Shown here one piece after another: positions 39,299 through 63,999 of a stretch of 64,000 nt of DNA; the first letter of the stretch is position 1; every line of letters begins with the position of its first letter. The position numbers were made by a program, and so were the translations under genes. The stretch is from the IMG/VR virus record IMGVR_UViG_3300023174_000040, positions 259,268 through 323,267 of that record. One strand, 5' to 3'. The notes beneath the pieces are model-generated. The model searched no databases. It was not told where the DNA came from and saw nothing but the letters and a program-made list of their open reading frames with translations.

Positions 39299-39299
39299 A

Positions 39300-40117: not shown

Positions 40118-40129
40118 TGTCAAAGAGCA
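40118..40129 (-). promoter_or_regulatory. boxA antitermination element
   Basis: TGCTCTTTGACA vs rrn boxA TGCTCTTTAACA (11/12). Confidence 0.7.
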
Positions 40130-40173
40130 AGTTTTTTCTTCAACTCATCATTTCCGACGTCGTTGATGGGCTC

Positions 40174-40223
40174 AGTATAGCGACTCCTTGAACCCTCGCA
40201 AGCCCCTATCCAAAAATTTTTTT
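40174..40223 (-). promoter_or_regulatory. Sigma70-type promoter for the ncRNA
   Basis: TTGCGA-16nt-TATACT; A/T-tract upstream; GC-rich GAGCCC discriminator. Confidence 0.7.
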
Positions 40224-40475
40224 GAGCCTATTTTTACGGGTAATTTTGCACTTTTCTTTTTTTTATTTAAAGTTTTTAAAATTTTTTCTTTGGCAAAAGA
40301 AGATAATTTTTTTTTTAAAAAAAATCAGCGGTTCTAGGGCAAATCACAGTCTTCACCGTAGTTGTTAACGTTGAAGCTGGGTCTCCATCGCCGTGGGTTC
40401 TAATTTTAGATTACTGAACATATTTTTCCTTAATTATGTATAGATATATATGTTATTTAATAAAAAGGAATTAAA

Positions 40476-40931: not shown

Positions 40932-40938
40932 TTATTTT

Positions 40939-43716: not shown

Positions 43717-43728
43717 AAAGGACAAAAC

Positions 43729-44001
43729 ATGATCAAATTCGACCCGCCACTAGAAGTGCAAGTAAAAGGAAAGAAAATAAATGTGAGCGAGCTGCCCCTT
43801 GTGGTAATTGACATTCAAAAAACCAAAGTATGCAAGGCGCAATCCTCCCGTTTCTACAAGACATTGACCTTGTGGGAAGGGGCGTCTTACGACGCCATAG
43901 GAAACTACACACAGGAGCAAGCGGAGGCCAGATACCTAGAACTGCTCGGTAGCAAACCAGCAAAAGAACTCGCAAAACTATACGTAGAACCAACCAAATA
44001 A
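43729..44001 (+). CDS. Putative fibre chaperone/accessory protein (paralog of 47988-48278)
   Basis: TLWEGASYDAIGNYTQEQAEARYLELLG. Confidence 0.6.
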   Translation: MIKFDPPLEVQVKGKKINVSELPLVVIDIQKTKVCKAQSSRFYKTLTLWEGASYDAIGNYTQEQAEARYLELLGSKPAKELAKLYVEPTK

Positions 44002-44011
44002 AGTAAAAAAA

Positions 44012-47296: not shown

Positions 47297-47985
47297 TGAA
47301 CTACTTCAAGACACCAAGCAACAAATACCTCGCCTTTATCCCTAGGTCGGGAAGCACAAGTTTCGCAAGGGCCATAGTAACCCAATTCTATCCGGAACTC
47401 CTTCCGAGGCTCGAGAAAAAACATCCTAACAAAACGGATCCAAAGCCCCAGTTCATCTGCCCGTCCAGCAGCTTTCCTGACGGGGACGCCTATGCCCTCA
47501 TAAGGGACCCGGTGGAAAGGTTCAGGAGCGGATTTTCAAGGGCAAATTTCGGAAGGACCGTGGACGAGGTGATAGAAGACCTTTTCAAGGGCGAATGCAT
47601 AATGAACGTTCACATCGAACCGCAGAGCAACAGGATAAAACACCAAAAGGACATAAAGTGCTTCAAGTTCCCAGAGGGAATAAACGCACTTTCGGAGGCA
47701 CTTGGGATGACGCCACCCGAGCAGGAAAATGAAAGCGAGGACGGCGAGAAGCCGAATCTCACGCAGAAGCAAATAGACAATTTAAGAAAATACTATTTTA
47801 AGGACGTGGAACTGTATGAGAATGCGAGTGTAGAATACACACCAACCACAACAGAACCAACCACAACAGAACCAACCACAACAGAACCAACCACAACAGA
47901 ACCAACCACAACAGAACCAACCACAACAGAACCAACAAACATTAATGATGAAGTGGATATGCCCAGATTATTTAAAGGAAAATAA
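47296..47985 (+). CDS. Sulfotransferase (family-2-like) with a (PTTTE)6 tail
   Basis: FIPRSGSTS 5'-PSB loop; IRDPVERFRSG 3'-PB; HIEPQ; TAATG overlap. Confidence 0.75.
   Translation: MNYFKTPSNKYLAFIPRSGSTSFARAIVTQFYPELLPRLEKKHPNKTDPKPQFICPSSSFPDGDAYALIRDPVERFRSGFSRANFGRTVDEVIEDLFKGECIMNVHIEPQSNRIKHQKDIKCFKFPEGINALSEALGMTPPEQENESEDGEKPNLTQKQIDNLRKYYFKDVELYENASVEYTPTTTEPTTTEPTTTEPTTTEPTTTEPTTTEPTNINDEVDMPRLFKGK
47841..47930 (+). repeat. Perfect 15-nt tandem repeat x6 (ACCAACCACAACAGA)
   Basis: Read directly. Confidence 0.95.
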
Positions 47986-47987
47986 AA

Positions 47988-48278
47988 ATGAAACTACAAA
48001 ATCCAATCACAATAAACATGCCCGACGTAGTGTTAAAAAATGGAAGAAAAAGAAGTATTCCTCCTTTAGTTTTAAAAGAATTAAATATTACAATAATTGA
48101 TAATGAAAATCAAAAAATAGCTAAGGCATCAATACCTCCACTTAAAAAACAAATAGTGTTATGGGAAAATGATTCCTATACTACTGCTGGTGATTATACT
48201 CAAGCACAAGTTGAAGCAAGATTATTGGAAATATTGGGCGATAACCCAACAGTAGTTTTAGAGAATTATTTTAAATAA
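47988..48278 (+). CDS. Putative fibre chaperone/accessory protein (paralog of 43729-44001)
   Basis: VLWENDSYTTAGDYTQAQVEARLLEILG. Confidence 0.6.
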   Translation: MKLQNPITINMPDVVLKNGRKRSIPPLVLKELNITIIDNENQKIAKASIPPLKKQIVLWENDSYTTAGDYTQAQVEARLLEILGDNPTVVLENYFK

Positions 48279-49433: not shown

Positions 49434-50654
49434 ATGGCGAACATTGTTTTTAGTGATCCTTTTAATTTAAGAGCGAGATACGGTGCACCCAATTCTTTAT
49501 CCTGGGATCAGAGAAATTTAGATTACATAGCAAAAATTGAATCAGCGAGAAACTACAAAGTATCATCGGCATCTCAAACCGCACCAGGAACACAAAACAG
49601 ATCAAACTACACCAGTTGCGTAGACAATTATCATTGTTTCTGGAATGGGGTAGGATGGACAGTAATACCAGCATGCTCATCCAGTTGGATAGGAGGTATG
49701 ACCTTAATGCAAGTCACTCCCACTCCCACAGTGACAAAAACAAGTACTCCAACTTTAACTCCAACTAAAACGCCTACTCCTACTTTAACAAATACTCCTA
49801 CACCAACCAATACTAAAACATTAACTCCAACTAAAACTTCCACCCCCACTTTAACACCAACCAGAACTTCCACTCCCACCCCAACATCAACCCCAACATT
49901 AACTCCTACCAAAACAAGCACACCCACATTAACCAGCACTCCTACTCTAACAATAGCTCCTCCAGCAATAGTGGAAGCATCCTTGCCATTCTATGATGAT
50001 TTCAACAGACAAAATAACCCTTACATATCAGGTTATTGGCGTGAACGCATAGGAAATTTTATAATATCTAATAATTCTGCGGTGGGCGTGGATCCATCCA
50101 TCTCTTTAATGACACTTAATGGAATAAGAGAAAAAGATTCTTTTATTAGTTGTTATGTGGATTTAATAAATTCATCGATACCTACGGGAGCAGCAAGATC
50201 ATATATGCCTGTGGGTTCAGGAGGAGGAATTATAACTAGATATACAGCCGATCCATATGGAGTATTTGGTGATGGGTATATGTATTTGGGAATGATTGCA
50301 AAAAATGGAACTACATATTACGGTCAAATATGGTCCAACAATGGATCATGGTCATTACTAAGTTCATCACCAATAAATTCTACAAACACCGTAGGCGTAC
50401 TAGCTTTTAAAACATTGGGAAGTTCTTTAACACTGTATTTTAATAATACACAAATAGTTTCTGTCATTAATACAAGCATCCCAGGATATGGTGGTATAGG
50501 CATAAGGGCTTTGGGCGCCAATTGTATTTTCGACAACATGCAGGTTAGTTCAATATCAAATTATAATAGATCTAGAGATATTGATCAAAATTATATTAAT
50601 TGGGGATTATTAAGAATGATAAATCAAAATAATATTTCAGGATGGGGTGAATAA
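49434..50654 (+). CDS. Virion-like protein with a long (TP)n linker and lectin-like beta-sandwich
   Basis: ~80-aa Thr/Pro tract; FYDDFNR...N..G..W start of a concanavalin-like domain. Confidence 0.7.
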   Translation: MANIVFSDPFNLRARYGAPNSLSWDQRNLDYIAKIESARNYKVSSASQTAPGTQNRSNYTSCVDNYHCFWNGVGWTVIPACSSSWIGGMTLMQVTPTPTVTKTSTPTLTPTKTPTPTLTNTPTPTNTKTLTPTKTSTPTLTPTRTSTPTPTSTPTLTPTKTSTPTLTSTPTLTIAPPAIVEASLPFYDDFNRQNNPYISGYWRERIGNFIISNNSAVGVDPSISLMTLNGIREKDSFISCYVDLINSSIPTGAARSYMPVGSGGGIITRYTADPYGVFGDGYMYLGMIAKNGTTYYGQIWSNNGSWSLLSSSPINSTNTVGVLAFKTLGSSLTLYFNNTQIVSVINTSIPGYGGIGIRALGANCIFDNMQVSSISNYNRSRDIDQNYINWGLLRMINQNNISGWGE

Positions 50655-50655
50655 C

Positions 50656-53202
50656 ATGAAAGAAAAAATATATAATTTAGTATTAAAAGACATAAAAGAT
50701 AAGACTTCATTCTTAGATGACATGAAAAAAGACTCGGGAGATGAATATATTCCGGAAAAAAAATGTTTAGCTTTAAATAACACAAATTTACAAAGAAGAG
50801 TTTTATCTTTTAGATTAACAGAAGAAGAAGCAGAAAAACTTGAAAAAGATCCAAGAGTGGAAGCAATTCAACAGAAAATCCCTTATAAAATAAAACCCCT
50901 GATTCTAGATCCTGGTCGTGATTATGGTGAAGAAAAAAATATAAGAATGCAAGCTGCGCCGTCAGATGCAGTAGCAGCAATCTACAGAATACCAACAGGA
51001 GAAGATGTAGATGTTGTTGTAGTAGATGGACACATAGACCCAAATAATCCAGAGTTTGCATTAAGAAAAGATGGAACAGGCGGAAGCAGAGTAAACCAAA
51101 TAGATTGGTTCAATGTTTTATATCCATATGGGGTTCCGGATAATTTCCGGCCATATGAAAAATACAATTATGAACCATATGTAAATCCAGACAATTATCT
51201 AGAAACAGAAGATAACAATCACGGTGCTCATGTAGGAGGAACAATAGCTGGAAATACTCAGGGTTGGGCACCAAAAGCAAATATATATAACATATCACCA
51301 TATCACGCAGAGATGGTCGACGGCCGAGATTGGAGGTCAGATGGTCCGCATGATCTATATTTACATGCTATTAAAGTCTGGCACGAAAATAAACCAGTAA
51401 ATATTAAAAAAGGAACAAAAAATCCCACTATAACAAATCATAGCTACGGGGTTGGCATTGGTGGAATTGATGTCAGAAATATTATAGACGTAACATACAG
51501 AGGCGTAAAATATACTTCTACAAGAAATTATTCTGGGGCCAAGGCAACAACAACTGTTAATTCTGGTAAAGTTATTTCTGGGACCATTACAAATCAGGGA
51601 ACAAATTACACAAATGAACCAACAGTGTCATTTTATGGGGGAGGACAAGCCAGAGCAAAAGCACCAGTCGGAAATGGAACAATATATGAAATAACAATAA
51701 CCGATCCTGGGGAGGGGTATCCTTGCGCTCGCTGCGAGCGATATCCAACTTCATGGGTTGAGTGGGTTCCGATAACATTCAGCCCTGCTCCTGCGGGAGG
51801 TCAAACGGCAATAGGTAGAGGATCGATTAGGATGGTTGAGGGGTCGGGAATTTATTATATAGAGATGCAAAACAGGGGAAGTGGTTATACTACTCCTCCT
51901 ACTATAACTTTCCCTCCTCCTCCAAATGGAGGAAGAACAGCAAAGGCAACATGTAAAATAAAGTCTGGGGTTTTGAATGAACCCATTGTCAATAACGGAG
52001 GATCGGGGTATTTAAATTTTCCAGAAGTTATATTAAGCGGAGGAAATCCTTCCACCCCAGCTCAAATAAGCATACTAGCCTTTGAGGATAATCATAAAGA
52101 TGGTGATTTGAGCACAATTAAAAACGGTGATGTTTTTATAGAATATTACGGTGAACCAACTTATAAAATAGTTCAAGATAATATAAATGGAACAATATAT
52201 GAAAGATATGTTGTTGAAAGTATAAAATACACCTGGTCGTGCGGAGAAGGCTACACCTCCGATCCAATTGTTAGCTTTTATGGCGGAAATTCTGTGGTGG
52301 ATGGAGTTAAAACCGGGAATAAGGTAGAGGCAAGAGCGATTCTGGGTACCGGGGCTAATCAAGGAAAAATTATAGGATTAAATATAACATATCAAGGTTC
52401 AGGCTATACCTCACCACCAAATGTGGTATTTACAAATGGAGGAGGGTTTTCAAAAGAACAATTAAATAATTTTGGATTAATATCTTATGCTTACTCGGAT
52501 CCATTGATGCAAGGTAAAAGATTCATAGACATAGGAATAAGAACTATTACTATGGAAGCAGATTTAACAGACCTGATGAATTCTGGAGTAGTTGTTGTAG
52601 GGGCGGCGGGCAATAATTCCACCAAAATAGATGTGCCAGGAGGACCGGATTATGACAATAAACTAAATGTGGTAGTCCCAGGATTTGGTTGGTATCTACC
52701 AGAAGGAGTGGACCCAATATATTTTACTGAATTCATGTATGAGACGTATTATCACAGAGGATCAAGTCCAACGGCTTGCCCAAATGTAATTAGCGTAGGA
52801 TCTTTAAGTAGATTGGTAGCAGAAACAAAAAATACTTGGAGCAATACAGGACCCAGAGTAGATGTTTATTCACCTGGGGATATGATAGCTTCAACGACAC
52901 ACAGTATTTTTCCCGGATATCCAAGTATTCCTGATATTAGAAGTATCGGAAAACCAATTACATACTATGTGTCAAAATTAAGCGGAACAAGCATGGCTAG
53001 TCCACAAGTATGTGGCATGATAGCATCCCACGCCACAACCAACAGAAATATAAATCAATTAACTGCGATTGAATTTATCAGAAATACCTCCAGAAATACT
53101 GTTAATGATACAGGAGGTAGCTATTCTGATCTCACCTCTTTATTGGGAGGGGCCAACAGATCTGCCTATTTTCCAAATATAAGTTATACCTTGTATAGTT
53201 AA
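50656..53202 (+). CDS. Subtilisin-like (S8) serine protease with inserted structural repeats
   Basis: VVVVDG, HGAHVGGTIAG, AAGN, GTSMASPQV. Confidence 0.9.
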   Translation: MKEKIYNLVLKDIKDKTSFLDDMKKDSGDEYIPEKKCLALNNTNLQRRVLSFRLTEEEAEKLEKDPRVEAIQQKIPYKIKPLILDPGRDYGEEKNIRMQAAPSDAVAAIYRIPTGEDVDVVVVDGHIDPNNPEFALRKDGTGGSRVNQIDWFNVLYPYGVPDNFRPYEKYNYEPYVNPDNYLETEDNNHGAHVGGTIAGNTQGWAPKANIYNISPYHAEMVDGRDWRSDGPHDLYLHAIKVWHENKPVNIKKGTKNPTITNHSYGVGIGGIDVRNIIDVTYRGVKYTSTRNYSGAKATTTVNSGKVISGTITNQGTNYTNEPTVSFYGGGQARAKAPVGNGTIYEITITDPGEGYPCARCERYPTSWVEWVPITFSPAPAGGQTAIGRGSIRMVEGSGIYYIEMQNRGSGYTTPPTITFPPPPNGGRTAKATCKIKSGVLNEPIVNNGGSGYLNFPEVILSGGNPSTPAQISILAFEDNHKDGDLSTIKNGDVFIEYYGEPTYKIVQDNINGTIYERYVVESIKYTWSCGEGYTSDPIVSFYGGNSVVDGVKTGNKVEARAILGTGANQGKIIGLNITYQGSGYTSPPNVVFTNGGGFSKEQLNNFGLISYAYSDPLMQGKRFIDIGIRTITMEADLTDLMNSGVVVVGAAGNNSTKIDVPGGPDYDNKLNVVVPGFGWYLPEGVDPIYFTEFMYETYYHRGSSPTACPNVISVGSLSRLVAETKNTWSNTGPRVDVYSPGDMIASTTHSIFPGYPSIPDIRSIGKPITYYVSKLSGTSMASPQVCGMIASHATTNRNINQLTAIEFIRNTSRNTVNDTGGSYSDLTSLLGGANRSAYFPNISYTLYS

Positions 53203-55709
53203 CCGTCTATAGAGTAGTCTGGATTTTCACTATCCATTTCTGTTTCATAATCCTTTATTTCTAGACCGTATTTTTCAACATCCTGCTTATCTGGTTCTGG
53301 GAGGGGTTTGGCATTATTATCCTCTGAGGTTTCCTCCTCAGATGGAGCGGGCTCTTCTTGAGGAGTTTCAGTTTCAGTTTCTCCACTATCTTCGGAAGGA
53401 GCCTCTAAATTTTGTGCGGGGCCGCCAGGGACTGCGGATAACTCAGTTTCATCTCCGTTATTTTCTTGAGGAATGCCCACCCCCAATAATTGAGGATTTT
53501 GAGATAAAACTTGAATCTTTAATTCTTCTAGTTTTTGAATCTTTAATCTACTAAGCATCTCAGAAGTTTCTTGATCATTGTATTGAAGCCACTGAGTGTA
53601 AATATCATAATCGCTCATTAAATTTGCTGTTTTAAGTTGTGTGGCAACATTTAATCTAGAATTAACAACTTCAGCTCTACTTAATTCTCTCCAATCGCTT
53701 GGAGGAGTCATTTTTATTTTAAGGTCTTTATAGAGTTCTTGCGGAAATCCACGAAGATATAGATGCCTATCTGCTATATCATAGAGGCAATCTTCAAAAG
53801 AAGATTGTAATCTCTCAATCATTCTTGCAAATTTAACATCCTGAGCAGATAAAGTCATTCTTGTAGCATTGACATCTTCTCCACTAAAATAACTTTTTGG
53901 GAAATTCAAACTAACAAAAAGTTTATTTCTAAAATAAACTGCGTCGTCAACTTCACCTAAATTTTGAGCACCAGGAAGAGTTTCTATTCTTGTGTTGCTG
54001 CCCGGTCTTAATGGCAACCAATAGTCTTCATCCACTGCGGGTGGTTGCCACCTTTCATCAACTTGATTAACGCTAGATCCGCTGCCCATGGCCACTTTTC
54101 TTTTTCTAAACTGGTCTTTCATTCTTTCAATTAGACTATCAACTTTAAATGGCGGTAATTGACCAACATCTACATAAAACACTCTTCTCTCAGGTGCTCT
54201 AGCAAGTCTATATGTGACCATGGCATCTTCCATCAATCTTAATTGATGAGCAGGGCTTCTGGCTGGTTCTATCAAGCTAACTCCATAAGGATAAAATAAT
54301 TTTCTATCTTCTCCTATTCTGAAGTGCACAATTTGATTTAAGTTGAATCTTATGGCAGTGGATTTTTGAAGATCGAAATTATCTTGACCCAAAGGTATAG
54401 GGTTCATCAAAGCACTATAGTCCGGTCCTTCTTTACTCTGTTGGAATTCTATTAATTTACCCCGGATAGTTTCTATACGATACATAGTTTCTGCCGGCAA
54501 GGATATAGCCTTGTACAATCCATCCTCAGGATTGTCCGGATCTATTATGAGTTCTAAGAAGTGATCTCCATTCACACAAAGATTCTTAAACCAGCTCCAC
54601 CCATTTTTATTTATATTCAACATCTGTCGATGGAAGAATAAAAATTCTAATTCTTTTCTGATCTCTTCATTTGATATCTCTAGTTTACATATATTGCCTT
54701 CTGTATCTTTTTGGCAATTGTGCAAAACCACACTATCTGTGCAAAAGCACTTGTGTTTTTCTACACTTATATCATATACATTTTCTTCTGTTTCATTTTT
54801 GAAAACACCTATAACTCTGCGGCGGTCTTGTTTCCTGCTTAATCTATGAACTTCAGTGGTAGTGAACCCAATCCTCTTTAGATTAGCAATTACACCCGGA
54901 ACTGTCATTCCAATCAACTCACATGTTTTATTTAAAGCCAATCCTTTACTTAACATATGAAGTATTTTTGATGTCTTTTTATTTTCTTCTTCTACTTTTC
55001 CTGTTCGCCATTCATCAACGAACATTCTCTCGTGAGTCCAACCTTTGTTGTATGTAAATACTCTGGGGAACTGATTTTTATTTAATTTAGTTTGATAATT
55101 ATTTACAGGCAATCTATAGAATGCCATGAGTGTGTCTCCTTCTTTCAAGGAGCCTGTTTCCACCCAATCCCCATTTCGATTTAGAACTTTGTGATCACTA
55201 GTAGCTGTGAATTTGCTTCCATCATCCAATATTATGGTTATTGTTTTCTCTTTCTTAACCAATCTTGGATTATATGCCCAGCCAAGGGTATAATCTTTAG
55301 AAATTTCATCGTAGCAATAAACTAGAAATCTTTCATCTGGACTATTTTTTACCAAGTCTTCAATTTTTTTAAGTCCAAAAGGAGTGCTTATTTCTGTGTT
55401 TCCGCTAACACATGCTTCATCGGATATTACCGTAACAACAGTTTCTATCTCGGGTAGATTTCTAAGCCTCTCATATTCCTTGTATCTAGCAGTTCTATTC
55501 GTTAGGGTGGTTATATCGATCATATCGTTTGTTTGACGATATGCCATCAGTCCACCTGGATTATTAACTACATCATCACCGGCAAATGTCTGCAGGGCAT
55601 CCGCTTGAGCGATGCCTGCCCCAGTAAGATTTTTAGTATCTTGTACCTTAGAACTTGGATCCTTTTGGAAACCAAATGTAAACAATTTAAAATAGTCTGA
55701 CCATGCCAT
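53199..55709 (-). CDS. gp20: Portal protein (T4 gp20-like) containing an intein
   Basis: YGVSLIEPA, LRLMEDAMVTYRLARAPERRVFYVDVG, EDYWLP, IETLPGAQNLG. Confidence 0.95.
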   Translation of the reverse strand: MAWSDYFKLFTFGFQKDPSSKVQDTKNLTGAGIAQADALQTFAGDDVVNNPGGLMAYRQTNDMIDITTLTNRTARYKEYERLRNLPEIETVVTVISDEACVSGNTEISTPFGLKKIEDLVKNSPDERFLVYCYDEISKDYTLGWAYNPRLVKKEKTITIILDDGSKFTATSDHKVLNRNGDWVETGSLKEGDTLMAFYRLPVNNYQTKLNKNQFPRVFTYNKGWTHERMFVDEWRTGKVEEENKKTSKILHMLSKGLALNKTCELIGMTVPGVIANLKRIGFTTTEVHRLSRKQDRRRVIGVFKNETEENVYDISVEKHKCFCTDSVVLHNCQKDTEGNICKLEISNEEIRKELEFLFFHRQMLNINKNGWSWFKNLCVNGDHFLELIIDPDNPEDGLYKAISLPAETMYRIETIRGKLIEFQQSKEGPDYSALMNPIPLGQDNFDLQKSTAIRFNLNQIVHFRIGEDRKLFYPYGVSLIEPARSPAHQLRLMEDAMVTYRLARAPERRVFYVDVGQLPPFKVDSLIERMKDQFRKRKVAMGSGSSVNQVDERWQPPAVDEDYWLPLRPGSNTRIETLPGAQNLGEVDDAVYFRNKLFVSLNFPKSYFSGEDVNATRMTLSAQDVKFARMIERLQSSFEDCLYDIADRHLYLRGFPQELYKDLKIKMTPPSDWRELSRAEVVNSRLNVATQLKTANLMSDYDIYTQWLQYNDQETSEMLSRLKIQKLEELKIQVLSQNPQLLGVGIPQENNGDETELSAVPGGPAQNLEAPSEDSGETETETPQEEPAPSEEETSEDNNAKPLPEPDKQDVEKYGLEIKDYETEMDSENPDYSIDG
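54717..55412 (-). mobile_element. Intein (232 aa, residues 100-331) in the portal
   Basis: DEA|CVSGNT block A; TSDHKV block B; VYDISV block F; VLHN|C block G. Confidence 0.92.
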
Positions 55710-57002: not shown

Positions 57003-58313
57003 TTATAAATTATTTTTATATACAAAACAATCATCATAAGTTATAAAGTTATTTAAACATTCATGGACAGCCTTTTTTACACCAGGATGATAGTTTTGTT
57101 CACCAGTGTAATAATCGTGACCCGCTAATATTCCATTTTTCTTTACTTTTGGAAGCCAAGCCTTTATATCATTTTTAACATCCTCGTATTCATGAGACGC
57201 ATCTATAAAAACAAAATCTAAAGAATGATCTTGAAATTGATTTGCGGCTTCAATGGAGGGTTTTCTAATTGGAATATAGTATTTTTCTATTGGCCTCATA
57301 TTCTGAATAAAGGTGTCATACAAAGAGTCTATTTCTTTCATTTCTTTATGCTCTGAGCTTCCCATCCAAGTGTCAACACAATAAAATTCTATATTTTTAT
57401 TTGAATTAGCAATTTCTACGGCCATAAAAGCGGAAGATTTTCCTTTCCAAGACCCTACTTCAACAAATCGACTACCAGAGGATGAACTAAGAACCATGTT
57501 TCTATACAGTTTGGTATATGTAAACCAATTTTCACCGAACTGTTGGCCCTCATAAATATGAGGAATTTTTTTAATCATATCATTAAGATTGATATATTGA
57601 CCCTTATTCTTCCACCAATTAATTATCCAATTATAAGAATCCCAGTGATATTCTCCTTGTCCATTTATTTCTGTAGGGTCTTTACCAAGATATGTTGATT
57701 TTACATTTTTTACGTCTTCTACAAATATTGGAATATTATAGACTGTGCCCAACCCAGAAAAAACTATGTTTTCTACAATGGGGATTAAATTATTATTTAT
57801 GTTCAGATTAAATTCATTTTCATTGACATAATAGCTGTCTATTATTTTTTTAACGTAATCTCTTTTTATTAAATACGCTGCTGCGCCCCAATCATCCACC
57901 AGTCTTTGTCTAAGTTCTATATCAATGTTATTTGGACGTATCCAAGATAATTGAACGCATTCCCAATTATTTGGAAGACTATCGATAAACTCTTCCCATG
58001 TAAAGCTCCAATAAGACACAGGTTCTAATGAAAGATCATCTTCACAAAAAAATGCATAATCTTCTTTTGTAGAGTCATACCATTTTTTTAGAGCTTTGAT
58101 GTGAGATGTTATGGGGCCTTTACTATTTTCATGTAATTTATCAACAAGTTGTCCATTCAACTTAAAATTATATTCATGATACCTTTTAAATATATGAGGA
58201 ATTAAATTTGTTATTCCATAACTAGAAAATTGTTTTTTAAGATTTTCTCTTCTTTCTAAGGATTCTTCAATACCAATAAAATTAACAGGACCTATTCCTT
58301 TTAGTTTATTAAT
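57003..58313 (-). CDS. GT25-like glycosyltransferase fused to a class I SAM methyltransferase; frame opens at the A11 tract without an ATG
   Basis: KLKGIGPVNFIGIEESLERR upstream of the track's TTG; SHIKA, EDD, WGAAAYLI; VEVGSWKG, DFVFIDASH, AGHDY. Confidence 0.75.
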   Translation of the reverse strand: MNKLKGIGPVNFIGIEESLERRENLKKQFSSYGITNLIPHIFKRYHEYNFKLNGQLVDKLHENSKGPITSHIKALKKWYDSTKEDYAFFCEDDLSLEPVSYWSFTWEEFIDSLPNNWECVQLSWIRPNNIDIELRQRLVDDWGAAAYLIKRDYVKKIIDSYYVNENEFNLNINNNLIPIVENIVFSGLGTVYNIPIFVEDVKNVKSTYLGKDPTEINGQGEYHWDSYNWIINWWKNKGQYINLNDMIKKIPHIYEGQQFGENWFTYTKLYRNMVLSSSSGSRFVEVGSWKGKSSAFMAVEIANSNKNIEFYCVDTWMGSSEHKEMKEIDSLYDTFIQNMRPIEKYYIPIRKPSIEAANQFQDHSLDFVFIDASHEYEDVKNDIKAWLPKVKKNGILAGHDYYTGEQNYHPGVKKAVHECLNNFITYDDCFVYKNNL

Positions 58314-59562
58314 TTTTTTTTTTAAGCATTATATCTTTAGCTAAATTAATTTCATTCTTAGGAGTAGAAATTAATTTTTTTAATATTGAATTATCAATTA
58401 AATCTTTATGAACCCACCAATCTTCAAAACTACAATCTTCATGAGGAGATACATCATTAAAAACAAGAGTATATCCCATACTTCTCAAATATCTTCTAGA
58501 TTTATCTCTGAAGCTTCTTGTTATGTCAACATAGTGATCGTGTTCATATGTTATTACTTTGAACTTATATTTATCGAATGGAATTAATAGTAATGCTTCA
58601 AATGTGTTTTTACAAGGTTCAATATCTATTTGTAAATAATCAATAACATTATTGGAAAAATTATTTCTCAAAAGTTCTTCATAATTTATCTTTAGAGCAT
58701 TTTCGCATAAAACTTTATTGGTTCTTTCTCTATCATGCATATCAACTAACTCACGTTTCATCTCTATGCCAACGCCAGTCCATCCAAATTCTCTTTCCAG
58801 TAAAGCTGTGTTACTATTATGAAGAGAATGGGCAGAACCTATCTCTAAGTAGGTTCCATTTTTCTTTCCATTCAAAGCAGCAAGAACAAAAAGATCTTGA
58901 TAAACCTGAGAGAAATTTCTTTCAATATTGTCAGATCCTTCAAACTTAAAACTCAAATCAAAATCAGAATTTTTGGAATAAGTAGCAGAACTCTGCTCAA
59001 CAGAGCCAGAGCCCAATGTGATCAGGTTGGTTTCTACCAACTTTAAATAAGTTTCATTAAGTTGATCTCCATATTCATCTTTTAATTTTCTAAGAAGTTT
59101 TCTTGCTTCTTTTGGCTTTCCATACCACCAAGAACAAACCGCCTTTTGAAAAACAAGCATGTATTTTGATGAATACTCAAAAGTAGTTATTAAATTAGAA
59201 GGGAGACAATCTGTAGTCTCCAGAGCTATCGAAGCATATAAGTACCCATCCATCCAATTTTGTTTTCTTTCAAAAAATTGACTTAAGAAAAAATATGCCT
59301 CTGGGCTTTTTGGCTTCAAATTAATAGCACTTTTTAATAAATTTTCACAAGTATAATCTCTATTTGATAAATTAGAGTAACACAAATAAAGTCTTAATAA
59401 GCATTCATACGCTAAATTTTCATCTTTAGTAAGTTCTGCGCACCTTAAATAATAACTACAGGCCGGTGCAAGGTGTTTTTGGTTTTCATACCACAATGCT
59501 AGATTAAAATTAGTTTTATCGTTATCAGAGTCTTTTATGTAATCTAATAATTCTTTATTCAT
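58309..59562 (-). CDS. TPR-domain plus FkbM-like methyltransferase protein
   Basis: Helical TPR-like N-half; QVYQDLFV, YLEIGS, IDYLQID, ITYEHD, FEDWW. Confidence 0.75.
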   Translation of the reverse strand: MNKELLDYIKDSDNDKTNFNLALWYENQKHLAPACSYYLRCAELTKDENLAYECLLRLYLCYSNLSNRDYTCENLLKSAINLKPKSPEAYFFLSQFFERKQNWMDGYLYASIALETTDCLPSNLITTFEYSSKYMLVFQKAVCSWWYGKPKEARKLLRKLKDEYGDQLNETYLKLVETNLITLGSGSVEQSSATYSKNSDFDLSFKFEGSDNIERNFSQVYQDLFVLAALNGKKNGTYLEIGSAHSLHNSNTALLEREFGWTGVGIEMKRELVDMHDRERTNKVLCENALKINYEELLRNNFSNNVIDYLQIDIEPCKNTFEALLLIPFDKYKFKVITYEHDHYVDITRSFRDKSRRYLRSMGYTLVFNDVSPHEDCSFEDWWVHKDLIDNSILKKLISTPKNEINLAKDIMLKKKN

Positions 59563-60535
59563 AAGTTTTTAAAAATTTTCCTAATATATTTTTTGGCATT
59601 CCCAAAATATAGGCCGCATTATCTTGAAATCCAAAAGTTATTAATAATTTATCTTTATAGTCGGCCATGCCACAACAGAATTCAATTTTTGCCCCCATAA
59701 ATGAAAAAGAATCTGAGATCTCAATAATTTCGAAATCTTTATTCCACACAACAAATCTATGTGTGTATATTGCATTTTTTCTTCCAGCTTCTGAGCTATA
59801 TAAATTTACTTCATGAACTATAGCTAAATAATTATCGTTTAAAAATAAAAGCTGCGAGCCGCCTCTAAGATCCATAGTTTCTAATTTTTTGTATTCATTT
59901 AATACGATTGTTTTGCATGTTTTATCTTCGGGATTTACTTCAACAACTTCTGTTGGGTTTGTCCATTTGACATAAGTGTACTTTTTATTTAAAACCGGCA
60001 TCCAATTTTTTTCACAATAACTATTGTCCATTCCGGGCGCAGGAATACGTAATCTGCTTTTTTCTATTACCTTATCTTTTTTATAAACTATCTCAGATAA
60101 CTCCATTCTTCCAACGCCATTCACCGTAGTATCTCTTCTGACTCCGCTCAAAAATAACTTATCATCCCACTCAACTAATCTTCCATCTTCTAGCCCAACG
60201 AATTCCCACATAGGATTTTCATCCAAAAAAGTGGTGTCTATAATTTTACTATCTTTTATATTAAAGTTTTCATCTAATTTGCATAAAATATTGTTTGTCA
60301 CCAACCTTTGATCATTTTCTTGATGAAGATAACAAAGTGGTCCCCAACTGTGCTCAAAAACTCCACTCTCACTATGATATAACACATAATTAAGATTCCT
60401 GAGGTTGACAAGAATCTCTCCAATTTTATTAATATATATAGTAGGATTGGTTAATGATGGACCTATCATAGAATCAATAGGAACAATCAAAGGAGCTATA
60501 AAGCCCCCATTCTCTACACAGTTTTTAACTAACAT
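59555..60535 (-). CDS. Five-bladed beta-propeller glycosidase/phosphorylase-like protein
   Basis: NPTI, GLEDGRL, EKNWMP, LRGGS, IEFCCG. Confidence 0.7.
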   Translation of the reverse strand: MLVKNCVENGGFIAPLIVPIDSMIGPSLTNPTIYINKIGEILVNLRNLNYVLYHSESGVFEHSWGPLCYLHQENDQRLVTNNILCKLDENFNIKDSKIIDTTFLDENPMWEFVGLEDGRLVEWDDKLFLSGVRRDTTVNGVGRMELSEIVYKKDKVIEKSRLRIPAPGMDNSYCEKNWMPVLNKKYTYVKWTNPTEVVEVNPEDKTCKTIVLNEYKKLETMDLRGGSQLLFLNDNYLAIVHEVNLYSSEAGRKNAIYTHRFVVWNKDFEIIEISDSFSFMGAKIEFCCGMADYKDKLLITFGFQDNAAYILGMPKNILGKFLKTYE

Positions 60536-60537: not shown

Positions 60538-61002
60538 TTATTGACCAAGCTCAGGTGGTTCAGTAGCAGGTGGTTCAGTAGCAGGTGGTTCAGTAGCAGG
60601 TGGTTCAGTAGCAGGTGGTTCAGTAGCAGGTGGTTCAGTAGCAGGTGGTTCAGTAGCAGGTGGTTCAGTAGCAGGTGGTTCTACAGTTACAGTTCCATCT
60701 TCATTATAAGAAAAACTTCCAACTAAAGACAAACCTTCAGATATATCTTCTGGTTTTATAGACCATAATAATTGCCCTAATTTACCATGAAGTTCAAAAA
60801 CTTCTTTTGCATCTTTGCCTAAAGCTGTAGTTATTTCTATTGGTGGTAATCCTCGTGGATTTCGCCAAAATATCCTGGCTCCTTCGTTAAAAGCATTTAC
60901 CATCATAACATATGTTTGGCGAGTTTGATTTTTAATTCTATTCGCAACCATCTCTGAAAGTGGCGTAGATGGTTGCTGGCTGTTGTTATCTAATATTCCC
61001 AT
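60538..61002 (-). CDS. Hypothetical protein with a (PPATE)8 tail
   Basis: 154-aa ORF coupled to the sulfotransferase. Confidence 0.7.
   Translation of the reverse strand: MGILDNNSQQPSTPLSEMVANRIKNQTRQTYVMMVNAFNEGARIFWRNPRGLPPIEITTALGKDAKEVFELHGKLGQLLWSIKPEDISEGLSLVGSFSYNEDGTVTVEPPATEPPATEPPATEPPATEPPATEPPATEPPATEPPATEPPELGQ
60553..60681 (-). repeat. Perfect 15-nt tandem repeat x8
   Basis: AGGTGGTTCAGTAGC units on the + strand. Confidence 0.95.
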
Positions 61003-61003: not shown

Positions 61004-61804
61004 TTAATTTCTCCATATTTCTAAATTAGAGTATTTGTTTAATAAAAAATTTCCTAAAACTTTGTCAGCATCACTGGGCACCGGATTCAAAACGGGTCTT
61101 ATGTTATGCAAACCCGGTATTCTATGAACACCGGAATCATCCTCTTTTGTCACCTGTACTATGTTAGTAAAATTGTGAATATAATATGGCAACTCTAAAT
61201 AATCATAAATTTTCTTCATAGTTTGACCTGGGTAGTTGGTCAACTCCTCAAATTCCAAAAATAAAATATCATTTTTATAACCTCTTGATATAGCATCTTT
61301 AATTCTATTGTAAGCTAATCCTACAGGTTGAGCCGCACTGCTCCATATTTCACATCGTCCCTCTACAGTTTGAGCTTTAAAATATTCATTTTGTTCAAAA
61401 TTCCACTGAGAAAATCCTGTGCTTTTTCTCCATAATTTTTCAAAACTAGACAGTATATCGCTTATATTTCTTACCGGGGCTATTATTTTAGGTTTTTCAT
61501 CAGTAATGAATTGCACCATCTCTATAAGACTAAGCCAACCTCTTCCTTTATCTATTATATAATTTTTATCACTTATATGATAATTATCTAAAATTGATTT
61601 TAAAACTCTTTTCAACTGATTGTGATTAACACCTTCTGCTTGGTGCTCTATCAATTTATCCCATTGGTTTCTGACACCAAAAAGAACATCGTGACAGCCG
61701 CTGGTGGCTTTGCTAACAAAAAGATCGTTATTTTGTGCCAATATATTACATAAAAGAGTGCTACCACTTCTTGGTAGACCACTTATAAAACTAAATTTTT
61801 TCAT
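61004..61804 (-). CDS. Sulfotransferase (family-3-like)
   Basis: ISGLPRSGSTLL, DKGR, VRNISDILSS, FEEL. Confidence 0.85.
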   Translation of the reverse strand: MKKFSFISGLPRSGSTLLCNILAQNNDLFVSKATSGCHDVLFGVRNQWDKLIEHQAEGVNHNQLKRVLKSILDNYHISDKNYIIDKGRGWLSLIEMVQFITDEKPKIIAPVRNISDILSSFEKLWRKSTGFSQWNFEQNEYFKAQTVEGRCEIWSSAAQPVGLAYNRIKDAISRGYKNDILFLEFEELTNYPGQTMKKIYDYLELPYYIHNFTNIVQVTKEDDSGVHRIPGLHNIRPVLNPVPSDADKVLGNFLLNKYSNLEIWRN

Positions 61805-62022: not shown

Positions 62023-63999
62023 TTATATTTGTATTATAGTAAGATCATCAACATACCCAGTAAATGTACTTCCTCCCCAGCACTCTGCTAATATTTCAAC
62101 AACACCGGCCTCAGTAGGGGTAAAACTTAAAGAAACTTGCTCCCAAGTATCCGCCACAGTCATATAACCCGTAACATCATTGGTTACTCCTGCTATTTGC
62201 CCACCCTTAACCCTTAATCTCATCACTAATCCAAAGGCACTTCTTCTCATCCAAGCCTTGACAGTAACCTGACTATTAGCACTCACAGCAACTGTTGCTA
62301 GACTAAGATCTAAAGGAAAGTTAATTGATCTTACGTTAACGTGCGTAGGAGCCATCGCCCAGGCTATTCCATTATTGCTGTATCTCACTGATGTTGTGCT
62401 ATAAATTAAACCAAAATCACACCATATATAGTGAAGATTGGCAGTTTGGTCATGATTATGAGAGAATACCTTAGAGTTACTGCCGTATCCTGGACTTGCA
62501 ACCGCAACTTCAGTAGTATCATTCAGAGCGCAATTAATAAAGTATGTCGGCCCTCCATTGTTAGTCCTATGAGATGCTGTGGTGTTTGTTGAAAACGTTA
62601 CATTTTTGAAAACATTGCTATGTCCAAGAGTATTATTATCCACTCCATATTGCCAACTATCAGATATTGTTCCATTGTTTGCAGTTAAATTATGGCCAGA
62701 AATAAAACCGATCCCATTGATATTATTTTTAATTGTGAAAGTATCTAGTGTATTAGAAAGAGCATTGTAGTATGTGATACCTGCTCCATTGTTGCTACAT
62801 ATAATCATATTTCTAAGTGTACTTTGTCCTAATTGATTGAATGCAAAAACTCCACCAGCAGAAGAATAGCAACAATAAATTGTATCATATGTAAAACGTA
62901 TATGTTCTCTAGCATACAAACCATATTGATCACAATTATTACAATGACAGTTAGTAGCTGTGGAATACATATTGCCCGGCAAGAATAGTCCATAATAAAA
63001 TCTAACAAAGCAAACTCTATCTACTGTAAGGTTTCCACCACCAGCAAGATAATAAGAATAATTTCCATATCCATATCCATTTCTTCCATCAAACCAACTT
63101 TCTCCTGTTCTGGTGCTCATATCTGTTCTATTCCAACCAAAAGAGTAAATTATTGGATTGCCAACTCCAGCGGACTGTGGTGATCGGCCTCCTATTTGAA
63201 AATTCAATAAAGATGTTGTTGTAGCTGTGGCGGTCGCCGCCAATGGTGCCTTTATTGTTTCTCTTTTATATGTTGTTACTGTTTCACTAGTTCCGTAATA
63301 TCCTGGTATCTGTATGCTTGATGACCCAATCGTGACAGGTCCAAATTGTCCACCAGTATCAAGCATGACTCTTGTTCCGTTAATACTTTGGATGCCGCAC
63401 CAAGTTTCTCCGCTTGTATTCTTGCCAATCAATGAACAAAGATTAAGACTATCGGCACTAGAACTTGCCTTGCAAGCAATAACATTAGACAACACGAATG
63501 TTTGAGCACCGTTGTCAGTATTCACATAGAATCCTATACTCTGAATACTTGATCCTAAGTTAGTAGCAAGATCTATGGTTATTGGAGTCCATCTATTAAG
63601 TACGGTCAGGTTTTCAATGTTGAAGGTGTTTACCGCTGTTGCCCCAGCCGCATCGGAACATAATTTCAGGGACAAAGATGAGGATGCTCCGATTGTGCCT
63701 GATATTTGTTTTATCCAGAAACTGATCTGTTGGTATCCGCTAAGATTCAAAGTTCCGGTAGCTTTGTATGCGGCCAATCCTGTGGTGAAGTTTGCTCCAA
63801 CCGCTATGGAATCTGAGCAGTCACCCTCTTTAATGCCACCCAAAACATCAGTAGTGGCCAAAGATGTTATTACGTCGGCAGTCTGTGCTGTCCACGCTGT
63901 TCGTCCATTTCCTCTGTTTCCGTGACTGGCAATATTAACTATTGGGGATGATGCCAATATTACTCTTTGATTGGAAACTTTTCTTAAAAATCCGGCAGC
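62023..63999 (-). CDS. Partial large virion/fibre protein with parallel beta-helix repeats (start outside window)
   Basis: Frame is open to the window edge; (C/N)NN..YG repeats; C-terminal carbohydrate-binding-like domain. Confidence 0.7.
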   Translation of the reverse strand, partial: AAGFLRKVSNQRVILASSPIVNIASHGNRGNGRTAWTAQTADVITSLATTDVLGGIKEGDCSDSIAVGANFTTGLAAYKATGTLNLSGYQQISFWIKQISGTIGASSSLSLKLCSDAAGATAVNTFNIENLTVLNRWTPITIDLATNLGSSIQSIGFYVNTDNGAQTFVLSNVIACKASSSADSLNLCSLIGKNTSGETWCGIQSINGTRVMLDTGGQFGPVTIGSSSIQIPGYYGTSETVTTYKRETIKAPLAATATATTTSLLNFQIGGRSPQSAGVGNPIIYSFGWNRTDMSTRTGESWFDGRNGYGYGNYSYYLAGGGNLTVDRVCFVRFYYGLFLPGNMYSTATNCHCNNCDQYGLYAREHIRFTYDTIYCCYSSAGGVFAFNQLGQSTLRNMIICSNNGAGITYYNALSNTLDTFTIKNNINGIGFISGHNLTANNGTISDSWQYGVDNNTLGHSNVFKNVTFSTNTTASHRTNNGGPTYFINCALNDTTEVAVASPGYGSNSKVFSHNHDQTANLHYIWCDFGLIYSTTSVRYSNNGIAWAMAPTHVNVRSINFPLDLSLATVAVSANSQVTVKAWMRRSAFGLVMRLRVKGGQIAGVTNDVTGYMTVADTWEQVSLSFTPTEAGVVEILAECWGGSTFTGYVDDLTIIQI

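What the first reader, a model, noticed from the sequence alone, without database searches (positions are those of the whole stretch)
58160..58330. A11 tract frameshifts the glycosyltransferase module: possible phase-variable switch
The TPR/FkbM ORF ends ATG CTT AAA AAA AAA AAT TAA (T11 at 58313-58323 on +). The +1 frame opens right there with no ATG and reads KLKGIGPVNFIGIEESLERRENLKKQF, a GT25-type N-terminus that the predicted TTG start at 58160 would omit. With A10 the two ORFs fuse into one ~850-aa enzyme. This fits slipped-strand phase variation, transcriptional slippage or +1 frameshifting toggling the glycan, as at bacterial GT contingency loci.
Basis: partly seen in the sequence, partly recalled or inferred. 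Interest (0 to 1): 0.7.

Follow-up and report, generated by a model that had tools for sequence, protein, structure and literature searches.

The report
Slippery poly-A tract splits phage enzyme
An eleven-A run, the longest homopolymer in this 323-kb freshwater T4-like phage genome, carries one A too many and so splits a four-domain sugar-modifying enzyme that many relatives encode as one protein; the same run varies from 9 to 21 As across relatives and is out of frame in about half of them, which is the pattern of a mutational on/off switch of a kind recently described in phages.

Summary
On the minus strand ATG CTT A11 TT AAT AAA (A11 = 58313-58323) ends a 417-aa TPR/FkbM-like ORF. The +1 frame opens there, and GT25 homology begins about 40 codons before the first canonical start (TTG 58160).

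A11 is not an assembly error. A second assembler gives A11 at 36x, and a 2025 sample of the identical strain also gives A11.

- **Fused form is common:** 846-852-aa TPR-FkbM-GT25-MT24 proteins exist with linker M[LV]KKK[IV]NKL, which is A10 in several alleles. Near-identical strains carry A10 in frame.
- **The tract is unstable:** 15 natural alleles span A9-A21, 8 in frame and 7 out of frame, the latter in both shift directions. Every break lies at or next to the tract.
- **The downstream half is kept:** all broken alleles retain it with no internal stop, 425-428 codons in the five that reach their natural stop. Among those five, dN/dS is about 0.1, as in fused alleles.
- **The genome otherwise avoids A9:** only 3 of 37 KKK windows are all-AAA, against 12.4 expected.

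Best reading: a hypermutable poly-A contingency-type locus, here in the OFF state and probably leaky through slippage. Within-population switching and RNA-level slippage could not be tested. This is a new member of a known kind (poly-A loci of T2/T4; poly-G tracts of Campylobacter phages).

The parts
58313..58323 (-). A11 homopolymer (T11 on + strand). It encodes the oligo-lysine linker and carries one A more than the in-frame A10 allele.
   Evidence: Read directly. Longest homopolymer of the genome. A11 confirmed by Logan's independent assembly of the source run X1 at depth 36 and by run X4, a different sample from 2025. Alleles A9-A21 at the same site in relatives.
58309..59562 (-). Upstream ORF, 417 aa: all-alpha TPR-like region (about residues 1-183, 59014-59562) plus FkbM-like methyltransferase region (about residues 215-400, 58363-58920). 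It ends ...DIMLKKKN*.
   Evidence: Pfam TPR and Methyltransf_21 (FkbM) hits are all below cut-off. The model of the fused homologue shows helical repeats then an alpha/beta fold, and Foldseek hits TPR proteins such as OGT and SPY. Many stand-alone homologues of 411-420 aa end at the same boundary.
57003..58328 (-). Downstream open frame, 441 codons: GT25-like glycosyltransferase domain (residues about 14-258, 57555-58289) plus Methyltransf_24 sugar-O-methyltransferase-like domain (residues 289-406, 57111-57464). No canonical start codon before codon 57.
   Evidence: Methyltransf_24 E 6.6e-22. PHROG 2835 E 5e-41, residues 4-258. tblastn to cyanophage GT25 genes. Profile hit to solved GT25 8xlz. 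Best structural match of the model is the sugar methyltransferase MeT1, 6g80; the matched residues were not listed, and I assign the match to the C-terminal methyltransferase domain by inference.
58160..58162 (-). TTG, the first canonical start codon in the downstream frame. Using it would delete 56 residues, including invariant GT25-domain residues.
58309..58311 (-). TAA stop of the upstream ORF, reached two codons after the last full AAA codon of the tract because of the extra A.
58293..58295 (-). ATA (Ile12 of the downstream frame). It is ATG in alleles L025, L066 and L067. The SD-like AAGGA (58300-58296) abuts it with no spacer.
   Evidence: In this genome SD-like motifs sit 5-8 nt before starts.
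59555..60535 (-). Conserved 326-aa partner ORF that overlaps the start of the enzyme gene by 8 nt. No family hit.
   Evidence: The same 325-327-aa ORF precedes the enzyme gene in L001, L002, L022, L023, L024, L065, L066, L068 and L070.

Best explanation
The two ORFs are the halves of one four-domain glycan-modifying enzyme: TPR, FkbM-like methyltransferase, GT25-like glycosyltransferase and Methyltransf_24 sugar-O-methyltransferase. The halves are joined by an oligo-lysine linker that is encoded almost entirely by AAA codons. This poly-A run is an insertion/deletion hot spot, through slipped-strand mispairing at replication.

This genome carries a genuine +1 A allele: A11 instead of the in-frame A10 that reads KKK-I-N-K-L. 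Translation therefore stops after ...MLKKKN. That yields a 417-aa TPR-FkbM protein resembling the many natural stand-alone versions, while the GT25-MT24 half has no start codon of its own.

The locus thus behaves as a phage contingency-type switch, and this genome sits in the OFF position for the glycosyltransferase half.

Because the run has 11 As, some full-length 852-aa protein is probably still made. RNA polymerase slippage giving A10 or A13 transcripts, or ribosome sliding on the lysine codons, would supply it, so OFF is likely leaky rather than absolute.

**Shown:** the anatomy, the reality of A11, in-frame alleles in near-identical strains, the length polymorphism, the confinement of all breaks to the tract, and purifying selection on the downstream half.

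**Inferred:** DNA slippage as the mutational mechanism, reversibility, leakiness, and any benefit of switching.
For: 1. **A11 is real.** The independent Logan assembly of source run X1 matches with 0 differences at depth 36. Run X4, another study from 2025 with the identical strain, also gives A11.

2. **In-frame alleles exist in close relatives.**
- L025 (97% aa) has A10 and reads ...DIMLKKKINKLKEMGPVNF... in one frame.
- Runs X2, X6 and X12 each have one letter left out at 58313.

3. **The fused architecture is common.**
- L002, L022 and L023 have single ORFs of 848-851 aa in conserved synteny.
- Eleven further database clusters of 846-852 aa cover 100% of the query.
- Their linker consensus is M[LV]KKK[IV]NKL.
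- Homologues with the two halves in reverse order, again as one 841-851-aa ORF, show the four domains belong together.

4. **The tract is hypervariable.** The 15 alleles are listed in the full report. Eight are in frame and seven are out of frame. A stand-alone homologue pair also differs, A10 against A12.

5. **All seven breaks lie at or within about 5 nt of the tract.** No broken allele has an internal stop downstream. The five complete downstream halves run 425-428 codons to their natural stop, L065 is cut by its contig end and L074 holds an assembly gap. OFF-OFF pairwise dN/dS, computed for WIN, L001, L065, L066 and L068, is 0.06-0.12 at dS 0.28-2.3, the same as ON-ON pairs.

6. **The genome otherwise avoids A9 in coding sequence.** Three of 37 KKK windows are all-AAA, against 12.4 expected. 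The tract is the only long run at which two long frames abut.

7. **There is precedent.**
- Poly-A runs of about 9 act as reversible contingency loci in T2/T4, including the glucosyltransferase gene agt (bioRxiv 10.1101/2025.10.21.683753).
- Bacterial RNA polymerase slips on runs of 9 As or Ts, and ribosomes shift and slide on A runs (PMC5009743).
- E. coli RNA polymerase needs at least 7 Ts or 8 As to slip detectably (PMC6260861).
Against: - No within-sample length distribution could be obtained, since only contigs were served. High-frequency, reversible switching, the defining property of a contingency locus, is therefore untested.
- The identical strain shows A11 in 2018 and in 2025, so the consensus allele is stable over years.
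- Three related OFF alleles (L001, L065, L066) share the same shift register over dS above 1. Persistent decoding of an out-of-frame gene fits that as well as, or better than, repeated switching.
- L066 and L067 have an ATG at codon 12 that could start the downstream half independently.
- Several allele calls come from low-depth contigs (3-6x). L074 has an assembly gap next to its A21.
- The function of the enzyme, and any benefit of turning it off, are unknown.
Confidence: 0.5

Rival explanations
1. Programmed recoding is the normal mode of expression. The out-of-frame junction is decoded at a set efficiency by RNA polymerase slippage or ribosomal frameshifting on the A run. The phage then makes both a short TPR-FkbM protein and the full-length enzyme in a fixed ratio, as in dnaX or the phage tail chaperone G/GT, and genomic tract length tunes that ratio.
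For: - Seven of 15 alleles are out of frame, yet all keep the downstream frame free of internal stops, and the five compared have dN/dS about 0.1.
- L001 (A13), L065 (A10) and L066 (A10) share the same register although their tracts differ by 3 nt and their downstream halves differ by dS 1.0-1.7.
- Runs of 9 or more As are known slippage sites (PMC5009743).
- The short product matches natural stand-alone TPR-FkbM proteins.
Against: - Eight of 15 alleles, including near-identical strains, are simply in frame, so recoding is not required by the family.
- OFF alleles need shifts in both directions (+1 in three, -1 in four).
- No stimulatory RNA structure follows the tract (z +0.78), and no SD-like element precedes it.
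- No RNA or protein data exist.
Confidence: 0.2
2. It is ordinary gene decay at a mutational hot spot. The A run is merely the most mutable site of the gene, and this phage has recently lost the GT25-MT24 half. The loss has no adaptive role and no compensating expression, and the downstream frame has simply not yet had time to accumulate further damage.
For: - The break is a single-base insertion in the longest homopolymer.
- Stand-alone TPR-FkbM genes without any GT25 partner are very common, so the short form is viable.
- A11 is fixed at consensus level in two samples.
Against: - Seven independent OFF alleles in several clades have exactly one lesion each, always at the tract, and none shows a second frameshift or stop downstream.
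- Pairs of OFF alleles diverged to dS above 1 still show dN/dS about 0.1.
- All 15 alleles keep at least A9 at this site, while this genome itself avoids A9 about four-fold.
Confidence: 0.2
3. The two ORFs are separately translated genes. The GT25-MT24 half is initiated on its own, by termination-reinitiation at a near-cognate codon: ATT 58313-58311, which overlaps the stop, or ATA 58295-58293.
For: - Genes of this operon are tightly coupled, for example by an 8-nt overlap at 59555-59562.
- The reverse-order homologues start the GT25 domain with ATG exactly where the window has ATT AAT AAA CTA.
- OFF alleles L066 and L067 have ATG at codon 12, and a gene caller used it in L066.
Against: - The window has no ATG, GTG or TTG before codon 57.
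- ATT is the Ile codon of the conserved fused linker KKKINKL, and it is AAT in the other OFF allele L001.
- AAGGA touches ATA with zero spacing, whereas genes here place SD-like motifs 5-8 nt upstream.
- Near-cognate starts are very inefficient in bacteria (my own knowledge, not checked here).
Confidence: 0.06
4. It is an assembly or sequencing artefact. The true genome has A10, and the extra A comes from homopolymer error.
For: Illumina and PCR errors rise in long homopolymers, and metagenome consensus can be wrong at low depth. This rests on my own knowledge.
Against: - Two assemblers agree on A11 at depth 36 for the source run.
- An unrelated 2025 sample gives A11 with 0 differences over 329 nt.
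- A 97% relative from yet another project has A11 (L067).
- Other samples reproducibly give A10 or A13 for their own strains.
Confidence: 0.03

Closest known systems
Phage contingency loci in T2/T4: poly-A simple sequence repeats, e.g. the A9 run in the alpha-glucosyltransferase gene agt (Gomez, Barrick & Waters, bioRxiv 10.1101/2025.10.21.683753)
   Same: Both involve a T4-like phage and a mononucleotide A run of 9 or more inside a sugar-transferase gene. In both, +/-1 indels in the run switch the gene off and on.
   Different: - There, reversion rates about 1000-fold above a point mutant and read-level heterogeneity were measured. Here only between-strain and between-sample polymorphism is seen.
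- Here the run sits in an inter-module linker, so OFF removes only the C-terminal two domains and leaves a natural-looking short enzyme.
- The run is conserved and expanded (A9-A21) across a whole family of uncultured freshwater phages.
- The enzyme is GT25-like with two methyltransferase domains, not a DNA glucosyltransferase.
Phase-variable bacterial glycosyltransferase genes: Neisseria lgtA/C/D poly-G tracts, Haemophilus lic2A (a GT25 member) tetranucleotide repeats, Campylobacter poly-G LOS/CPS genes (PMC2651432, PMC8355987, listed; the gene names are from my own knowledge)
   Same: In each, a simple repeat within the coding sequence of a surface-glycan enzyme toggles the reading frame, and strain-to-strain repeat numbers differ. 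lic2A belongs to the same CAZy family as the domain broken off here.
   Different: - Those are cellular genes with the repeat near the 5' end, giving complete ON/OFF.
- They use poly-G or tetranucleotide repeats rather than poly-A.
- Their switching rates and phenotypes have been measured.
Hypermutable poly-G tracts in Campylobacter phage receptor-binding genes (referred to in PMC10877375 and PMC8713573; the primary paper was not read here)
   Same: A phage-encoded homopolymer gives frame-dependent expression variants within phage populations.
   Different: Those are poly-G tracts in tail-fibre/receptor-binding genes of cultured phages, with the phenotype shown. Here it is a poly-A tract in an enzyme gene, known from metagenomes only.
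Rescue of poly-A frameshifts by transcriptional slippage or ribosome sliding: endosymbionts Buchnera/Blochmannia, Shigella, E. coli reporters (reviewed in PMC5009743; PMC6260861)
   Same: An A run of 9 or more at a genomic frameshift, with the downstream coding sequence kept intact under purifying selection. This is the situation in which polymerase infidelity restores some full-length product.
   Different: No RNA data are available here. In the endosymbionts the frameshifts are fixed degenerative lesions, whereas in this phage family in-frame and out-of-frame alleles coexist among close relatives.

Membership tests
Contingency locus (SSR-mediated phase variation) | A simple sequence repeat long enough to be hypermutable lies inside or next to the coding sequence | tested here: met
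   A11, the longest homopolymer in 323 kb. All 15 alleles have at least A9.
Contingency locus (SSR-mediated phase variation) | Repeat number differs between closely related genomes and changes the reading frame | tested here: met
   A10 (in frame), A11 and A13 (out of frame) occur among alleles 94-98% identical at protein level (X12, also A10, is about 93% identical at DNA level). The wider family spans A9-A21, with 8 ON and 7 OFF.
Contingency locus (SSR-mediated phase variation) | High-frequency, reversible switching within a clonal population | not testable with these tools
   All runs were served as assembled contigs, which drop minority variants. The same strain shows A11 in 2018 and 2025.
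Contingency locus (SSR-mediated phase variation) | ON and OFF states give different, selectable phenotypes | not testable with these tools
   The phage is uncultured, and the enzyme's substrate is unknown.
Programmed transcriptional slippage or programmed ribosomal frameshift | The out-of-frame arrangement is conserved among homologues | tested here: not met
   Eight of 15 alleles are in frame. OFF alleles need +1 in three cases and -1 in four.
Programmed transcriptional slippage or programmed ribosomal frameshift | A slippery homopolymer or heptamer lies at the shift site | tested here: met
   A11 allows perfect re-pairing of Lys-tRNA and exceeds the 8-9 nt needed for bacterial RNA polymerase slippage (PMC5009743; PMC6260861).
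Programmed transcriptional slippage or programmed ribosomal frameshift | A stimulatory element is present (downstream structure or upstream SD-like sequence) | tested here: not met
   The 98 nt after the tract fold no better than shuffles (z +0.78). No SD-like motif lies just upstream.
Programmed transcriptional slippage or programmed ribosomal frameshift | Heterogeneous mRNA or a trans-frame protein is observed | not testable with these tools
Glycosyltransferase family 25 (Pfam PF01755) | Significant match to the family profile or to a member of known structure | tested here: inconclusive
   - The window's own protein gets no PF01755 hit, even at E up to 10.
- The 57% homologue P0005 scores 25.8 bits against a cut-off of 24.
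- Many homologues carry precomputed PF01755 hits.
- The family profile hits solved GT25 8xlz at E 1.5e-5.
- PHROG 2835 matches at E 5e-41.
- Conclusion: a divergent GT25-like domain.
Glycosyltransferase family 25 (Pfam PF01755) | Acidic DXD-type motif of GT-A enzymes is conserved | tested here: met
   E96-D97-D98 (FFCEDDL) is invariant in the 12-sequence alignment and aligns to EDD of 8xlz. Its catalytic role is inferred, not tested.
FkbM-type methyltransferase (PF05050) with TPR repeats | Match to the family profiles above the curated cut-off | tested here: not met
   - Methyltransf_21 scores 16-19 bits against a cut-off of 22.7, and the TPR families are all below cut-off.
- The model shows helical repeats followed by an alpha/beta fold, and Foldseek hits TPR proteins.
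- These labels are plausible but weak.
Methyltransf_24 (PF13578) class I SAM methyltransferase | Match above the curated cut-off | tested here: met
   78.8 bits against a cut-off of 26.3, residues 289-406. The best structural match of the model is sugar O-methyltransferase MeT1, 6g80, E 2.6e-8; which residues matched was not listed.

The most novel reading that the evidence does not exclude
The poly-A junction is not an on/off switch but a heritable rheostat. In this phage family the out-of-frame state is a long-lived, functional configuration. RNA polymerase slippage or ribosome sliding on the A run sets the ratio of a short TPR-FkbM enzyme to the full four-domain enzyme, and changes of genomic tract length (A9 to A21, in either register) retune that ratio. 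This would explain two observations: half of the natural alleles are out of frame, and their downstream halves have stayed under purifying selection as strong as in fused alleles over dS above 1.
Probability: 0.2. Interest if true: 0.7.

Novelty: new member of a known kind. Interest (0 to 1): 0.5.

Why it matters
Contingency loci in phages were demonstrated only very recently, and only in laboratory coliphages. This locus would show the same principle at work in nature, in uncultured freshwater jumbo T4-like phages.

It comes with a ready-made natural allele series (A9, A10, A11, A13, A17, A21) and a clear molecular read-out: a 48-kDa product against a roughly 99-kDa one.

It also affects annotation. 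Automatic gene calling gives a truncated glycosyltransferase starting at TTG 58160, or two unrelated 'hypothetical proteins', where the biological unit is one four-domain enzyme.

If the enzyme modifies a virion or host surface glycan, the switch would create phage subpopulations with different glycans. That bears on host defence evasion and on how metagenomic 'strain' variation is read.

Tried and rejected
- **Raw-read length distribution.** Every run found is kept only as Logan contigs, so searches give one consensus length per strain and sample, not a distribution.
- **More alleles by DNA pattern in IMG/VR**. Only contigs already known were found, plus one new in-frame A9 allele (L077).
- **Structure of the fused homologue**. 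Mean pLDDT is 62. The TPR, FkbM-like and MT24 parts are usable, but the GT25 part and the linker (residues 401-463) are below 50. The claim that the tract lies in a flexible linker therefore rests on domain boundaries in alignments and on the reverse-order homologues, not on the model.
- **Pfam GT25 on the window's own protein.** No hit.
- **Frameshift stimulator.** No structure downstream.
- **Internal promoter.** A 10/12 sigma-70-like match has its TATAAT at 58333-58328, just 5' of the tract. The number of such matches equals that in shuffles, and the hexamer is not conserved in relatives. Rejected as chance.
- **ATT 58313 as a relic start codon.** Rejected: it is the Ile codon of the conserved fused linker KKKINKL.
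- **Other long A/T runs of the genome as further switches.** The three 10-nt runs are intergenic, and the 9-nt runs lie in frame within single ORFs.
- **First simulation of run-length expectation.** It timed out and was replaced by extrapolation from short runs.
Full report
**What the window is.** It is the last 64 kb of a single 323,267-bp contig with GC 35.8%. It carries a T4-type portal gene interrupted by an intein, a Dam methylase, one tRNA and large lectin-domain proteins. The most similar cultured phages are T4-like cyanophages, and only at protein level. Public runs that hold the locus are lake and freshwater metagenomes. It is therefore an uncultured freshwater jumbo T4-like phage.

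**The observation.** Read on the minus strand, the sequence is ...GAT ATA ATG CTT AAA AAA AAA AAT TAA TAA ACT AAA AGG..., with eleven As at 58323-58313.
- The 417-aa ORF 58309-59562 ends ...DIMLKKKN*.
- The frame one base further on is open from 58328 to 57003. It reads CLKKKINKLKGIGPVNFIGIEESLERRENLKKQF..., with no ATG, GTG or TTG until TTG 58160 at codon 57.

**Homology starts at the tract, not at the TTG.**
- tblastn finds about a hundred cyanophage genes annotated as GT25 or glucosyltransferase, aligning from residues 14-18.
- PHROG 2835 aligns residues 4-258, E 5e-41.
- A 12-sequence family alignment has invariant residues E21 E22 S23 R26 R27 K48 E52 ahead of codon 57. It also has the GT-A type acidic motif E96 D97 D98.
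- The profile of that alignment hits the solved GT25 protein 8xlz from profile position 15, E 1.5e-5.
- Pfam's GT25 model misses the window's own protein. It catches a 57% homologue just above cut-off and many further homologues. 'GT25-like' is the fair label.
- The C-terminal domain is a clear Methyltransf_24. The best structural match of the model is the sugar O-methyltransferase MeT1, which I assign to this domain by inference because the matched residues were not listed.
- The upstream ORF is all-helical (TPR-like) and then alpha/beta (FkbM-like). All its Pfam scores are below cut-off.

**A11 is real.**
- Logan's independent assembly of the probable source run gives a 12.7-kb contig. It is identical over the stretch at word depth 36.
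- A run from a different study and year (2025) contains the identical strain. It again gives A11, with 329 nt and no differences.
- A 97% relative from a third project also has A11 (L067).

**What relatives look like.** In the orthologous position, after the same 326-aa ORF and before the Dam and portal genes, several phages encode one continuous ORF of 848-851 aa: L002, L022 and L023. The protein database holds eleven more clusters of 846-852 aa that cover the whole fused query. Their linker reads M[LV]KKK[IV]NKL. Where the DNA was read this is encoded as CTT/GTT A10 T(T)..., for example in L025, L069 and L070, or as A9 followed by G. The window is thus the in-frame allele plus one A.

A second group (L024, L003, P0019-P0030) has the two halves in the opposite order, GT25-MT24-TPR-FkbM, again as one ORF of 841-857 aa. 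Its initiator Met sits exactly where the window has the Ile after the lysines. The four domains therefore belong together, and the tract marks a true module boundary.

Stand-alone TPR-FkbM proteins of 411-420 aa ending at that same boundary are also very common. The short product of the window is thus a natural-looking protein.

**The tract is unstable.** Junctions were read from 15 different contigs or strains (plus runs).

| State | Alleles |
|---|---|
| In frame (8) | A9: L002, L023, L071, L077; A10: L025 (= X2/X6; X12 also has A10), L069, L070; A17: L022 |
| Out of frame, needs +1 shift (3) | A11: window (= X1, X4), L067; A21: L074 (assembly gap nearby) |
| Out of frame, needs -1 shift (4) | A13: L001 (= X7, depth 32); A10 plus a missing base just after the run: L065, L066; A9: L068 |

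- Out-of-frame alleles occur in at least three clades.
- Two near-identical stand-alone genes differ by A10 against A12 at their very end.
- Within the window's closest group (94-98% protein identity), A10, A11 and A13 all occur.

**Selection.** In all seven broken alleles the only lesion is at the run or within about 5 nt of it.
- No broken allele has a stop or a second frameshift downstream. The five that reach their natural stop (WIN, L001, L066, L068, L074) run 425-429 codons; L065 is cut by its contig end and L067 by its short contig.
- Pairwise Nei-Gojobori dN/dS among five of them (WIN, L001, L065, L066, L068) is 0.06-0.12 at dS 0.28-2.3. That is no different from fused pairs, 0.05-0.10.
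- For the window against L001, both broken and in different registers, there are 56 synonymous and 31 non-synonymous differences. The site counts are 241 synonymous and 1040 non-synonymous.
- The downstream half is therefore not decaying. Either the OFF states are short-lived on an evolutionary scale, or the downstream half is still expressed from OFF genomes.
- The genome as a whole avoids the sequence. Only 3 of 37 Lys-Lys-Lys windows are AAA AAA AAA, against 12.4 expected from codon use. Long A/T runs are several-fold rarer than extrapolation from short runs predicts. No other run of 9 or more has two long frames abutting. Against that background, at least A9 at this site in every relative examined stands out.

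**Mechanism.** The simplest account is slipped-strand mispairing in the A run during replication, giving heritable +/-1 (and larger) length changes. This is a contingency-type locus.
- The OFF state truncates the enzyme to TPR-FkbM and removes GT25-MT24.
- The same mechanism was demonstrated experimentally for A runs of about 9 in T2/T4. That work included the glucosyltransferase gene agt, with about 1000-fold elevated reversion and read-level heterogeneity of about 7e-4 (bioRxiv 10.1101/2025.10.21.683753).
- Bacterial RNA polymerase slips on runs of 9 As or Ts, and ribosomes shift and slide on A runs (PMC5009743; PMC6260861).
- An A11 template is therefore likely to yield some A10 or A13 transcripts, and so some 852-aa protein. 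This leakiness is inferred, not shown.

**Alternatives weighed.**
- *Obligatory programmed frameshifting* is disfavoured. Eight of 15 alleles are in frame, OFF alleles need shifts of both signs, and there is no stimulatory structure. The shared register of L001, L065 and L066 keeps a 'rheostat' version alive.
- *Independent initiation* is unlikely in this genome. There is no canonical start. ATT 58313 is the conserved linker Ile codon and is absent from L001. AAGGA abuts ATA 58295 with no spacer, whereas SD-like motifs here sit 5-8 nt from starts. L066 and L067 do have ATG at that codon.
- *Plain decay* is hard to reconcile with seven single-lesion alleles and dN/dS of 0.1.
- *Assembly error* is excluded for practical purposes.

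**Limits.**
- No raw reads or RNA could be laid, so within-population heterogeneity, reversibility and slippage are untested.
- Some allele calls rest on contigs of 3-6x depth.
- Recombination is evident: the window and L001 differ by dS 0.034 upstream of the tract but 0.278 downstream. This prevents a clean count of independent switching events.
- The enzyme's substrate is unknown.

**Verdict.** That fits a phage contingency locus, and the OFF state is probably leaky. It is a new natural example of a recently recognised kind rather than a new kind.

Noticed in passing
window 53199-55709 (-): The T4-type portal (gp20) gene is interrupted by an intein (Pfam Intein_splicing, residues 115-331, then Portal_T4). 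A portal gene with the same intein hit is recorded beside the enzyme gene on a contig carrying the L068-type allele, and ORFs of the same length (836-838 aa) sit there in L001 and L002.
   Followed up: partly
window 60538-61002 (-), repeat 60552-60681: A 154-aa ORF ends in nine PPATE units encoded by a perfect 15-nt tandem repeat (8.7 copies, 100% matches). L001 has the same repeat. This Thr/Pro-rich tail sits in the same operon as the sulfotransferase and the GT/MT enzyme and could be their glycosylation substrate, which is speculation.
   Followed up: partly
window 38967-40475: A 1.5-kb stretch has no ORF longer than 51 aa, in an otherwise densely coding phage genome. It holds a T10 run (40307-40316) and has no Rfam match.
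   Followed up: partly
window 42000-48000: A GC-rich island (46-50% against 35.8% for the genome) covers two very large ORFs, 40867-43716 (949 aa) and 44012-47296 (1094 aa). Both have Laminin_G_3 lectin domains and may be fibre or receptor-binding proteins of foreign origin.
   Followed up: partly
L024 3001-5556; L003 1604-4129: These homologues carry the same four domains in reverse order (GT25-MT24-TPR-FkbM) as a single 841-851-aa ORF. This is a swap of the two halves around the same module boundary that holds the poly-A run in the window's clade.
   Followed up: yes
window 57003-59562 versus L001 2736-5296: Divergence is mosaic. The upstream half has dS 0.034 and the downstream half dS 0.278 between the window and L001. 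This implies a recombination breakpoint near the poly-A junction.
   Followed up: partly
L072 3668-3745; L073 3662-3740: Two near-identical stand-alone TPR-FkbM genes with no GT25 partner end in A12 against A10 (KKKNN* against KKK*). The same C-terminal poly-A run is thus length-variable even where it has almost no coding consequence.
   Followed up: partly
window 61004-61804 (-) and 62023-63957 (-): A sulfotransferase gene (Pfam Sulfotransfer_3/1) and a 644-aa protein with a weak right-handed beta-helix match (below Pfam's cut-off) lie upstream on the same strand. The locus looks like a glycan-tailoring cassette next to structural genes.
   Followed up: no
whole genome (G000): Coding sequence avoids AAA AAA AAA: 3 of 37 KKK windows against 12.4 expected. 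A/T runs of 9 or more are several-fold rarer than extrapolated from shorter runs.
   Followed up: yes
window 50647-53202 (+): An 851-aa ORF with a C-terminal subtilase (Peptidase_S8) domain lies next to the portal gene.
   Followed up: no
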